NCBI GenBank assembly: GCA_002811645.1
Contig: PDIP01000103.1
Span: forward strand, 18,563 to 82,562
Direction: 5' to 3'
DNA: 64,000 bases
DNA from: Corallochytrium limacisporum Hawaii
Lineage: Eukaryota > Protista > Pluriformea
Shown: positions 56,343-58,264 of the stretch, in pieces
Layout: every line of letters begins with the position of its first letter
Numbering within the stretch: the first letter of the stretch is position 1
Translations under genes and position numbers: made by a program
Notes under the pieces: model-generated
Told to the model about the DNA's origin: nothing
Database searches by the model: none
Seen by the model: only the letters and a program-made list of their open reading frames with translations

Positions 56343-56355
56343 AAAAAAAAAAAAA
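56343..56355 (-). terminator. RNA polymerase III oligo-T terminator of the tRNA-Gly gene
   Basis: A 13-nt T run on the minus strand begins 3 nt after the discriminator base. Confidence 0.75.
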
Positions 56356-56358
56356 GCG

Positions 56359-56479
56359 TGCATTGTCCGGGACTTCCGTCTATAGAAGGAGTATTCGCAT
56401 ACTCAAGCATTCGTTTTCAGATATCGAACCCGGGTCACCCGCGTGGCAGGCGAGTATCATACCACTAGACCAACAATGC
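56359..56479 (-). tRNA. tRNA-Gly(GCC), 71 nt mature, with a 50-nt intron in the T-loop (exons 56479-56423 and 56372-56359)
   Basis: Minus strand: GCATTGT-TG-GTCT-AGTGGTA-TGAT-A-CTCGC-CT[GCC]AC-GCGGG-TGAC-CCGGG-TTCGAT-[50 nt]-T-CCCGG-ACAATGC-A, then CGC and a long T run. The acceptor (7 bp), anticodon and T stems all pair. Anticodon at 56447-56445. Confidence 0.93.
56373..56422 (-). other. Non-canonical tRNA intron (position 59/60) bounded by a bulge-helix-bulge motif
   Basis: CCGGG/CCCGG helix, AGU bulge, UUCG/CGGA 4-bp central helix, AUA bulge, UCUG/UAGA helix. Internal hairpin GAGUAU-GCGA-AUACUC. Confidence 0.88.
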
Positions 56480-56803
56480 TACACGCTTTGAGTGTACCAC
56501 TATTAGGTGAAAGAGAGGGGCGAAAATATAATATATAAAATACTGGTGTGGCACGAGATGGAGAATTGTATAGTGAATGTACTGGATTGCCTAGTTAAGA
56601 AGAACGGTAGGTCGGTCGCACCCAAGGAGGTCCGGTCAATCCAGACACAGGCAGGGGTGCCCGGCAAGCCCACCCACACCCCGGAGCCCCGAACCTGGGG
56701 GATCATGGTCCTCGTGCACATCGCCACACCCAAGCTGTTACGAATACTGGAGTTTTTGCCGCAGTTAACATATACAGTATTAAATCTGCTACTACGCTAC
56801 AAT

Positions 56804-58264
56804 TTAGTTGGCATGACTGGCTGCGCCACTAAAGGCGAGGCGAGTGGATTCCTCAAGGGGTGCGATCCAATCCTCCGTGGATCCCTCCAAAGGCTTCAAG
56901 AAGATAGATGCGGACGGATTGTGTACAATTATCCACTTGCCTTTTGTCTCATACTTGGTGTGCTTGCCGATGTCGATCTCTCCAAGTGTCTTGAAGGTGG
57001 ATGGATCGCAATACATAAACCTTGGCGCATCGGTAAGGATGAAGTATCGCTTGTTACCAAAGAGTCCCCGGCGCTTCTGCATTGGCCCATGGTGCAGGAC
57101 CACCTCACCCGAAGGAATAATAGGAGCGATAGGCAGCGACTCTTGCTCCTTCAGGATTTGCTTGCGTTCTTCGCCCCGAATAATGCTGCCCTTACCAATC
57201 TCTATATCATCCTTGATTGAGGTGATTGCCGTCCCTCCTGCCCCGAAGATTATCTCCTCTGGTGCGTCCTTGTCATCCATATGATCCTGTTCGATACGAT
57301 CCAGATGCAGATCACTCTTCTGGGCATCCTCGCCGCTAACAGGAGGTAGGTATGGCCGCATCTCAGGCGGTTCTGTGCGGTGCAGGGCTCCCCATTGGAT
57401 GCCATTGAAGAACGGATGCGCCTTCAAGGCCGCGAAGCCACCACCTTCCCGCTCACTGCCCAAGCGCTTAGCTGGATCCTTGATGAGAATCTTGCTTATT
57501 AAATCCTGGGCGTTTTCCGGGAAACCATTTGGGAATTCATACTCCAGCGCTTCGACCTTCTTGAATACTCCGTATGCATGCCCCGCCGTAAACGGAGGCT
57601 TGCCAGCGATCATTTGAAACAATATACAGGCAAAGGCCCAGAGATCGCTCTCGTGCACTGTCTCCTTACCTCCGATTAATTCCGGACTGCCGTACTCCGC
57701 AGTACCGACAAAACTATTGGAGCGATCCTTTTCTGGATCTCCGGAGAGAATCTTGGCAGTGCCAAAGTCCGTAATCCGAATGTGTCTCTGTTCTGATACC
57801 AAAATGTTCTCTGGCTTCAGATCACGATGAATAATACCTACTCGGTACAGGTGCTCCAATGCCTCAACAATTTCTGCTGCGTACCACTGGGCCACACTAA
57901 GTTCAAAGCAGCCCATCTTCAGGATCCAGTCGAGCAGTTCTCCTTTGGGTGCCAGTGAGAGTACAAAGAACAGCCGGCTTTCATCTTGAAATGTGAAGTA
58001 TAGGCGCACAAAGAATGGGTGGGCTCCAATTTTTGCAAATACGTCGCGTTCAATGGTCACATACTTGATTTTCTTCTCCCGGATCACCAGGCTCTTGTTC
58101 ACAATTTTAACTGCAAACTTCCGGCCGCTACTAATTTCCTTGCATTCCTTTACCTCCGAGTAGGATCCTTCACCAAGAACATCTCCGAACTCAAAATCAG
58201 GCCTTCTTCGTTTCCGGTTCGGGCTACTGGGGGGTGGCGACGCGGGTGCGTACGCTTCAGCCAT
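56804..58264 (-). CDS. PDPK1: 3-phosphoinositide-dependent protein kinase 1 (AGC kinase + C-terminal PH domain), 486 aa
   Basis: DFEFG..LGEGSYS, IREKKIKYVTIERD, HPFFVRLYFTFQD, HRDLKPENIL, ITDFGTAK, RSNSFVGTAEY; PH-like KRRGLFGNKRYFILTD.PRF.Y.DP. Confidence 0.95.
   Translation of the reverse strand: MAEAYAPASPPPSSPNRKRRRPDFEFGDVLGEGSYSEVKECKEISSGRKFAVKIVNKSLVIREKKIKYVTIERDVFAKIGAHPFFVRLYFTFQDESRLFFVLSLAPKGELLDWILKMGCFELSVAQWYAAEIVEALEHLYRVGIIHRDLKPENILVSEQRHIRITDFGTAKILSGDPEKDRSNSFVGTAEYGSPELIGGKETVHESDLWAFACILFQMIAGKPPFTAGHAYGVFKKVEALEYEFPNGFPENAQDLISKILIKDPAKRLGSEREGGGFAALKAHPFFNGIQWGALHRTEPPEMRPYLPPVSGEDAQKSDLHLDRIEQDHMDDKDAPEEIIFGAGGTAITSIKDDIEIGKGSIIRGEERKQILKEQESLPIAPIIPSGEVVLHHGPMQKRRGLFGNKRYFILTDAPRFMYCDPSTFKTLGEIDIGKHTKYETKGKWIIVHNPSASIFLKPLEGSTEDWIAPLEESTRLAFSGAASHAN

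What the first reader, a model, noticed from the sequence alone, without database searches (positions are those of the whole stretch)
56359..56479. Nuclear tRNA-Gly(GCC) split in the T-loop by an intron with a canonical archaeal-type bulge-helix-bulge (BHB)
Seen: an intact 71-nt tRNA-Gly cloverleaf on the minus strand, interrupted by 50 nt inside the T-loop, with a Pol III T run downstream. The precursor folds as: T-stem CCGGG/CCCGG; 3-nt bulge AGU (56374-72); central 4-bp helix UUCG (56428-25) / CGGA (56378-75); 3-nt bulge AUA (56424-22); helix UCUG/UAGA. Cutting each bulge after its second base (AU|A, AG|U), as tRNA splicing endonucleases do on BHBs, regenerates exactly the standard T-loop UUCGAUU. 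The intron also holds a 6-bp hairpin with a GNRA (GCGA) loop. Established: eukaryotic tRNA introns normally sit at 37/38 and are located by a ruler mechanism. BHB introns at other positions are typical of archaea and known from a few algae such as Cyanidioschyzon merolae. Inference: this apparently animal-related protist may splice ectopic, BHB-defined tRNA introns, which I do not know to be described in opisthokonts. Standard tRNA scanners would probably miss or discard such genes.
Basis: partly seen in the sequence, partly recalled or inferred. Interest (0 to 1): 0.93.

Follow-up and report, generated by a model that had tools for sequence, protein, structure and literature searches.

The report
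Archaeal-style tRNA intron in animal relative
A single-celled relative of animals (Corallochytrium limacisporum) appears to build all its glycine and cysteine tRNAs, and several others, by cutting an intron out of the T-loop at an archaeal-style RNA signal, a position that animal- and fungal-type splicing enzymes are described as unable to use; this is read from DNA and still needs RNA proof.

Summary
Observation confirmed base for base. Window 56479-56359(-) is a tRNA-Gly(GCC) gene with a 50-nt insert at 59/60 and a strict bulge-helix-bulge (BHB), an upstream TATA/T-run motif and a T13 terminator. The genome is Corallochytrium limacisporum (holozoan). A second copy has identical exons, different flanks and 4 intron changes that keep the BHB. 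No intronless nuclear Gly gene was found. Seven more anticodons (Gly-TCC, Ser-CGA, Cys, Arg-ACG, Leu-CAA, Leu-TAA, Sec) carry unrelated inserts at the same site. All 8 have a 4/4 central helix in one register (shuffle P about 5e-13), with one compensatory change. A permuted Ala(CGC) and a 43/44 intron in initiator Met also occur. SEN2, SEN34, SEN54, a probable SEN15 and RtcB are present. Best reading: TSEN cuts the BHB independently of its ruler and RtcB ligates (0.85). No RNA evidence, no relatives available, and in this copy the BHB is not the predicted lowest-energy fold. The intron class is known from archaea and red algae; I found no report in opisthokonts. The scan noted the same system before at other loci of this genome.

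The parts
56523..56537 (-). Upstream TATA-like / T-run motif (YATATA-N4-WTTTY), probable Pol III upstream promoter element
   Evidence: Sequence. The motif followed by a T-loop word gives 49 matches vs 8 for the reversed control, mostly tRNA genes; also upstream of a 5S-rRNA-like sequence. Promoter function is inferred.
56423..56479 (-). 5' exon of tRNA-Gly(GCC), positions 1-59
   Evidence: identical in the second copy at G000:C88; spliced form called by ARAGORN
56445..56447 (-). Anticodon GCC
56425..56428 (-). Exon strand of the BHB central helix, UUCG (54-57)
56422..56424 (-). 5' bulge AU|A; predicted cut between 56423 and 56422
   Evidence: Geometry; cut site inferred from the known BHB rule
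56373..56422 (-). 50-nt intron at 59/60
   Evidence: present in contigs of two DNA runs
56418..56421 (-). 5' strand of flanking helix h' (UCUG), pairs with 56382-56379
   Evidence: 5 bp in the C88 copy
56389..56404 (-). Intron hairpin, 6 bp with GCGA loop (GCAA in the second copy, still GNRA)
   Evidence: pair probability 0.96-0.99 in this copy
56379..56382 (-). 3' strand of flanking helix h' (UAGA)
56375..56378 (-). Intron strand of the BHB central helix, CGGA
56372..56374 (-). 3' bulge AG|U; predicted cut between 56373 and 56372
   Evidence: Geometry; cut site inferred
56359..56372 (-). 3' exon, positions 60-73
   Evidence: identical in the C88 copy
56343..56355 (-). T13 run, Pol III terminator-like (more T runs follow)

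Best explanation
This is a working nuclear tRNA-Gly(GCC) gene with a BHB intron at 59/60, one of at least 11 of about 50 nuclear tRNA genes found in Corallochytrium that need non-canonical BHB processing. Shown from DNA: intact exons, BHB geometry, shared upstream motif, terminator, enzyme genes. Inferred: (1) Pol III transcribes it with help from the upstream TATA/T-run motif, since the insert removes B-box C61 from its place in this gene; (2) the T-loop 5' half UUCG pairs with the intron end CGGA, so the T arm becomes a long helix with two 3-nt bulges; (3) the organism's own SEN2/SEN34-based endonuclease cuts AU|A and AG|U by reading local structure, without docking SEN54 on an L-shaped body, which cannot form while the T-loop is paired; (4) RtcB joins the exons and restores the T-loop UUCGAUU. 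The introns are most likely a gain within this lineage.
For: Nine genes, 8 anticodons, have inserts of 23-57 nt at the same site; 8/8 independent inserts give a 4/4 central helix at offset 0 and 0/8 at offsets of 1-3 either way; joint shuffle P 5e-13. Compensatory pair: Arg(ACG) has exon UUCA with intron UGAA, the others UUCG with CGRR. For 5 of 9 genes the BHB-containing fold is the local minimum and a sixth is within 0.2 kcal/mol. Two Gly(GCC) copies: 71/71 exon identity, diverged flanks, 4 intron differences all outside the central helix and bulges. Only these genes were found for Gly, and Gly, Cys and Arg CGU/CGC codons are 11.5% of 9,647 codons in 14 window ORFs. Permuted Ala(CGC) and two-intron initiator Met rebuild into ARAGORN-valid tRNAs. 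SEN2 and SEN34 keep the Tyr/His/Lys triads and the Arg-Arg and Arg-Trp tweezers seen in the human enzyme; SEN54 and RtcB present. The same T-loop pattern retrieves 59/60 introns from four metagenome contigs with prokaryote-type, probably archaeal, neighbours. Precedent with RNA proof: C. merolae (PMC3728597).
Against: No RNA evidence: the two RNA-like runs do not cover the tRNA and show no joint. The BHB is not the predicted minimum fold for this copy, Gly(TCC) or Sec. Gly(TCC) and Arg(ACG) have imperfect flanking helices. The tRNA search is not exhaustive: the Rfam search scored 63 of 584 candidates and missed an intact Val(CAC), and the assembly has gaps. Reviews state that the four-subunit TSEN removes only 37/38 introns (PMC10485636). 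No relatives were available to test conservation.
Confidence: 0.85

Rival explanations
1. The introns are spliced, but by something other than the complete SEN2/34/54/15 tetramer: a sub-complex without SEN54 (as proposed for C. merolae) or a second, unrecognised nuclease.
For: PMC3728597 proposes a Sen2-Sen34 sub-complex for ectopic introns. Corallochytrium SEN2 departs from 6 of 26 columns that are at least 90% conserved in 149 homologues (others: mean 0.9, max 5), though it is also the most divergent overall.
Against: Only two PF01974 genes were found in the genome, both of eukaryotic SEN2/SEN34 type, not archaeal. Eukaryotic TSEN cuts strict BHBs in vitro (PMC10485636, PMC6379350), so no new enzyme is needed. 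This rival is largely a sub-case of the best explanation.
Confidence: 0.07
2. Insertion-inactivated pseudogenes; real Gly, Cys and other tRNAs come from intronless genes missing from the assembly.
For: The assembly has 286 contigs with N gaps; my searches are lower bounds; no RNA proof.
Against: Would need all Gly, Cys, Arg(ACG), Sec, Leu(CAA) and Ser(CGA) genes to be missing while their broken copies keep near-perfect exons, promoter motif and terminator. Random insertions do not explain one site and one helix register in 8/8. A target-site duplication of the palindromic T-loop would put the repeat at offset +2, seen in 0/8.
Confidence: 0.04
3. The tRNAs work unspliced, with an extended T arm or an alternative T-arm-like hairpin.
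For: In Cys and Arg(ACG) the intron start can close an alternative T-like hairpin, and ARAGORN calls these two precursors.
Against: In 7 of 9 precursors no tRNA is called. The acceptor 3' strand would be displaced by 23-57 nt. The D/T-loop elbow needed on the ribosome cannot form (established tRNA structure).
Confidence: 0.02
4. Contamination or transfer: the genes come from an archaeon or an alga.
For: 59/60 BHB introns are typical of archaea (PMC3978253).
Against: The genes lie on nine long nuclear contigs among eukaryotic genes; this one sits next to a PDK1-like kinase ORF and a cohesin-loader-like ORF (names from sequence resemblance). They share the upstream motif and T-run with the genome's ordinary tRNA genes, encode no CCA, and have eukaryotic exons.
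Confidence: 0.02

Closest known systems
Ectopic-intron and permuted nuclear tRNA genes of Cyanidioschyzon merolae (Soma et al. 2013, PMC3728597; review PMC3978253)
   Same: Nuclear tRNA genes with BHB introns outside 37/38 including the T-loop, multi-intron genes, permuted genes, an upstream TATA-like element with T-run terminator, and Sen2/Sen34/Sen54 homologues.
   Different: Corallochytrium is an opisthokont. Its ectopic introns found here sit almost all at one site (59/60, 9 of 10) rather than across the cloverleaf. It has a probable SEN15 and a B-block TFIIIC-like gene, both reported as not found in C. merolae. In initiator Met the outer helix of the 43/44 BHB is supplied by the 37/38 intron. 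C. merolae has RNA proof; this has none.
Archaeal non-canonical BHB tRNA introns (59/60 junctions in Thermofilum, PMC3978253; metagenome contigs L140-L143)
   Same: hBHBh' geometry: T stem as h, T-loop 54-57 paired to the intron's CGRR, two 3-nt bulges.
   Different: Host is a eukaryote with Pol III-type signals and SEN2/SEN34/SEN54, not an archaeal symmetric endonuclease. No intron sequence relation was apparent by eye.
Atypical tRNA introns of Chondrus crispus and the Guillardia theta nucleomorph; permuted tRNAs of prasinophytes and chlorarachniophyte nucleomorphs (PMC13578239, PMC3978253)
   Same: Eukaryotic nuclear-type tRNA genes interrupted in D or T loops, or permuted.
   Different: All are algae or algal-derived genomes. 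The permuted Ala(CGC) here has its junction at 15/16, a type listed only once, and with doubt, in O. tauri.
Canonical 37/38 introns processed by human/yeast TSEN and RTCB (PMC10485636, PMC10539383)
   Same: Same enzyme set with catalytic residues kept; the genome also has at least 10 genes with 37/38 introns.
   Different: The site is in the T-loop, which removes the elbow that the ruler mechanism reads.

Membership tests
Strict BHB (hBHBh') tRNA intron | 4-bp central helix between exon and intron | tested here: met
   UUCG/CGGA 4/4; 8/8 isotypes in the same register
Strict BHB (hBHBh') tRNA intron | Two 3-nt bulges on opposite strands | tested here: met
   AUA and AGU
Strict BHB (hBHBh') tRNA intron | Flanking helices h and h' of at least 2 bp | tested here: met
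   T stem 5 bp; h' 4 bp here, 5 bp in the C88 copy. Relaxed in Gly(TCC) and Arg(ACG).
Strict BHB (hBHBh') tRNA intron | Cutting after the second base of each bulge regenerates a standard tRNA | tested here: met
   ARAGORN calls tRNA-Gly(GCC), 71 nt; 8 of 9 spliced models called, Leu(TAA) not (its acceptor stem is mispaired)
Strict BHB (hBHBh') tRNA intron | BHB is the favoured fold of the precursor | tested here: inconclusive
   Not the predicted minimum for this copy (+2.4 kcal/mol); the minimum for the C88 copy and four other genes
Strict BHB (hBHBh') tRNA intron | Cleavage by the splicing endonuclease and ligation in vivo | not testable with these tools
   No small-RNA data
Functional nuclear tRNA-Gly(GCC) | Paired acceptor, anticodon and T stems, invariant bases, A73, no encoded CCA, terminator | tested here: met
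Functional nuclear tRNA-Gly(GCC) | Internal B box intact in the gene | tested here: not met
   Position 61 of the unspliced gene reads T, not C, in both Gly(GCC) copies; also lost in Ser(CGA) and Leu(CAA). An upstream motif is present instead.
Four-subunit (animal/fungal-type) TSEN in the host | Two distinct catalytic subunits with Tyr/His/Lys triads | tested here: met
   Best PDB matches human SEN2 (E 2e-22) and SEN34 (E 3e-26); triad and tweezer residues aligned
Four-subunit (animal/fungal-type) TSEN in the host | SEN54 with N-terminal extension | tested here: met
   PF12928 E 1.7e-11; human SEN54 E 4e-13 with the GPK motif kept
Four-subunit (animal/fungal-type) TSEN in the host | SEN15 | tested here: inconclusive
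   210-aa candidate: Pfam Sen15 E 0.039 below cut-off, human SEN15 E 1.5, top Atlas clusters all Sen15 at 0.82; structure model unusable
Group I / group II self-splicing or spliceosomal intron | Catalytic core of hundreds of nt, or GT-AG ends | tested here: not met
   50 nt, begins AU; no Rfam match

The most novel reading that the evidence does not exclude
A complete four-subunit, animal/fungal-type TSEN in a close relative of animals routinely works in two modes in vivo: ruler-guided at 37/38 and BHB-guided at 59/60, 43/44 and at the ends of a circularly permuted precursor. Essential amino acids depend on the second mode. If so, ectopic tRNA introns are not confined to archaea and algae and may be overlooked in other opisthokont genomes.
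Probability: 0.6. Interest if true: 0.85.

Novelty: new member of a known kind. Interest (0 to 1): 0.75.

Why it matters
A 2023 review states that the four-subunit TSEN of animals, fungi and amoebozoans can remove introns only at 37/38 and that tRNAscan's eukaryotic settings are therefore more reliable for those groups (PMC10485636). A 2026 review lists only unicellular algae as eukaryotic exceptions (PMC13578239). A holozoan whose Gly, Cys, Sec and initiator tRNAs depend on ectopic BHB processing would break that rule inside the animal-fungal group. It would give a direct test of whether enzyme architecture restricts intron position, an open question the review names. It would also mean that standard annotation under-calls tRNA genes in protist opisthokonts. 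From my own knowledge, not checked here, the species is culturable and transfectable.

Tried and rejected
ARAGORN and Rfam on the raw window: nothing. First Gly pattern was mis-spaced and missed the GCC genes; repeated correctly. Pattern for Arg(TCT)/Ile(TAT): no gene. A loose genome-wide T-loop/BHB pattern is not enriched over its control (8,852 vs 9,192), so the motif alone finds nothing. Promoter-plus-T-run pattern filled with duplicates. Metagenome scan for a eukaryote-type Gly(GCC) with T-loop insert: none; a looser one gave four prokaryote-like contigs. Fungal-type ligase Trl1 (PF09511): no match, but no control rang, so inconclusive. AlphaFold of the SEN15 candidate without alignment: pLDDT 37, not used. 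Large genome pieces could not be fetched. Target-site duplication of the palindromic T-loop rejected by register. In one search the Cys flanking helix is over-counted as 16; it is 6-7 bp. Literature searches for Corallochytrium, opisthokont or holozoan atypical tRNA introns gave no report; the library is incomplete.

Full report
Observation. The minus strand at 56479-56359 reads as a eukaryotic tRNA-Gly(GCC) with 50 extra bases in the T-loop. ARAGORN and Rfam miss the gene on the raw window. Removing 56422-56373 gives a 71-nt sequence that ARAGORN calls tRNA-Gly(GCC). Contigs of two DNA runs of the source sample carry the insert. An upstream TATA-like/T-run motif lies at 56537-56523 and a T13 run at 56355-56343.

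Organism. The genome is 24.1 Mb in 286 contigs, the size published for Corallochytrium limacisporum (PMC5560861). Three proteins from it match EukProt entries named Clim_ at 100%.

Second copy and no intact copy. A BLAST of the locus finds one more copy, at G000:C88. Its 71 exon bases are identical, its flanks are diverged, and its intron differs by three substitutions and one deletion, none in the central helix or bulges; the GNRA loop stays GNRA. A pattern for any Gly tRNA body, blind to what follows the T-loop, returns as tRNA-like hits only the two GCC genes, one TCC gene and the mitochondrial gene. All three nuclear genes are interrupted at 59/60. The search is not exhaustive: the Rfam search scored 63 of 584 candidates and missed an intact Val(CAC), and the assembly has gaps.

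A family of such genes. Using Rfam hits and the upstream motif, which is enriched 49 to 8 over its control, I found 50 nuclear tRNA genes: 30 intronless, 9 with only a 37/38 intron, 9 with a 59/60 insert, one initiator Met with introns at 37/38 and 43/44, and one permuted Ala(CGC). The 59/60 set is Gly(GCC) twice, Gly(TCC), Ser(CGA), Cys(GCA), Arg(ACG), Leu(CAA), Leu(TAA) and Sec. The inserts are 23-57 nt and unlike each other. In all eight independent cases the four bases ending two before the 3' exon pair 4/4 with T-loop 54-57; sliding by one to three bases gives 0/8; the joint probability under intron shuffling is about 5e-13. Arg(ACG) has UUCA in the exon and UGAA in the intron, where the others have UUCG and CGRR: a compensatory change. 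A duplication of the palindromic T-loop would put the match two bases further on, which is seen in 0/8. The permuted Ala and the two-intron Met rebuild into valid tRNAs when cut by the BHB rule. Gly, Cys and Arg CGU/CGC codons make up 11.5% of 9,647 codons in 14 window ORFs, so these genes are unlikely to be dispensable.

Weak point. ViennaRNA does not favour the BHB in this copy: it lies 2.4 kcal/mol above the local minimum, with pair probability 0.01-0.03. It is the minimum for the C88 copy, Ser, Cys, Arg and Leu(TAA), within 0.2 kcal/mol for Leu(CAA), and not favoured for Gly(TCC) and Sec. This copy could be spliced less well than its twin, or the enzyme may capture a minor fold.

Machinery. 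Two endonuclease genes are present; their best solved relatives are human SEN2 and SEN34, with catalytic triads and tweezer residues aligned (residue roles from PMC10539383). SEN54 is present with its N-terminal extension. A SEN15 candidate is supported only weakly. RtcB is present. SEN2 departs from 6 of 26 highly conserved columns, more than any of 149 homologues, but it is also the most divergent sequence overall, so this is only a lead. A 1,536-aa frame with a B-block TFIIIC domain exists, so TFIIIC is probably not lost. The insert removes B-box C61 from its place in four of nine genes, including this one, which suggests the upstream motif carries part of the promoter function (inference).

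Mechanism. Pol III makes a precursor in which the T arm is extended into a helix with two 3-nt bulges. The SEN2/SEN34 active sites cut AU|A and AG|U by reading that local shape. RtcB joins the exons. The anatomy and the genes are shown; transcription, cleavage and ligation are inferred. Probability about 0.85. Rivals: another enzyme form (0.07), pseudogenes (0.04), unspliced function (0.02), contamination (0.02).

Comparison with what is known. The intron is a member of a known class. C. merolae has T-loop and other ectopic introns and permuted genes, with RNA proof, and has Sen2, Sen34 and Sen54 but no recognised Sen15 (PMC3728597). 59/60 junctions occur in Thermofilum (PMC3978253). My T-loop pattern retrieved four metagenome contigs with the same geometry and prokaryote-type, probably archaeal, neighbouring genes. 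Reviews list only algae as eukaryotic exceptions (PMC13578239) and state that the four-subunit enzyme removes only 37/38 introns, while noting that Xenopus TSEN cuts a BHB placed in an mRNA in vitro (PMC10485636). I found no report for any opisthokont; the library lacks most subscription papers.

Earlier findings. This scan noted the same system at other loci of this genome. I reached the reading before consulting them and checked those loci myself; they are not independent support.

Verdict. Real, very probably functional, a known kind of intron in a lineage where it is described as not possible. Interest 0.75; RNA confirmation is the missing step.

Noticed in passing
L048 (G000:C242:178,0xx, minus): Circularly permuted tRNA-Ala(CGC): 3' part first, 26-nt spacer, then positions 1-15; termini can form a relaxed BHB with the junction at 15/16; the rebuilt tRNA is called by ARAGORN.
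   Followed up: yes
L069 (G000:C22:166,350-166,625, minus): Initiator tRNA-Met with a 31-nt intron at 37/38 and a 57-nt strict-BHB intron at 43/44 whose outer helix is supplied by the end of the first intron, which predicts an order of removal.
   Followed up: yes
L042, L046, L053, L056: The only Ser(AGA), Thr(CGT), Ser(TGA) and Leu(TAA) genes found are mispaired at acceptor positions within 1-4, with short leaders. The genome has a Thg1 (L074) and a second, TLP-like paralogue with a lysine-rich N-terminus (L075), and the mitochondrial tRNAs looked at have paired acceptor ends: possible 5' editing of nuclear tRNAs. No BHB-based permutation could be drawn for them.
   Followed up: partly
L117 / L137 (G000:C173:7,677-8,130, plus): Element with the upstream motif, a tRNA 3' piece ahead of a 5' piece that has a ~66-nt D-loop insert. 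Looks permuted at the anticodon loop (UUC), but no central helix fits and an intact Glu(UUC) exists elsewhere.
   Followed up: partly
window 56523-56537 and most tRNA loci: Fixed-spacing upstream motif YATATA-N4-WTTTY in front of most tRNA genes and a 5S-rRNA-like gene (L071).
   Followed up: partly
L056 / L073: The Leu(TAA) T-loop intron contains a run of six T, and the gene lacks a long T run downstream; how Pol III reads through and stops is unclear.
   Followed up: no
leaders, spacers and introns of many tRNA loci (e.g. L002, L010, L048, L049, L069): GTAC/AGTAC words, often in hairpins, recur in non-exon parts of tRNA transcripts; not counted against chance.
   Followed up: no
   Followed up: partly
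L052:1384-2355 (minus): SEN2 has RMA in place of the conserved K-Y-G stretch before the catalytic Tyr and lacks several conserved aromatic residues.
   Followed up: partly
L140-L143: Metagenome contigs with prokaryote-type genes carry tRNA-Gly(TCC) genes with a 59/60 BHB intron and, apparently, further inserts in the anticodon or D region.
   Followed up: partly
window 56804-58264 (minus): Intronless PDK1-like kinase ORF; an RNA-like contig runs from it to 56554, about 75 nt short of the tRNA's 5' end on the same strand.
   Followed up: no
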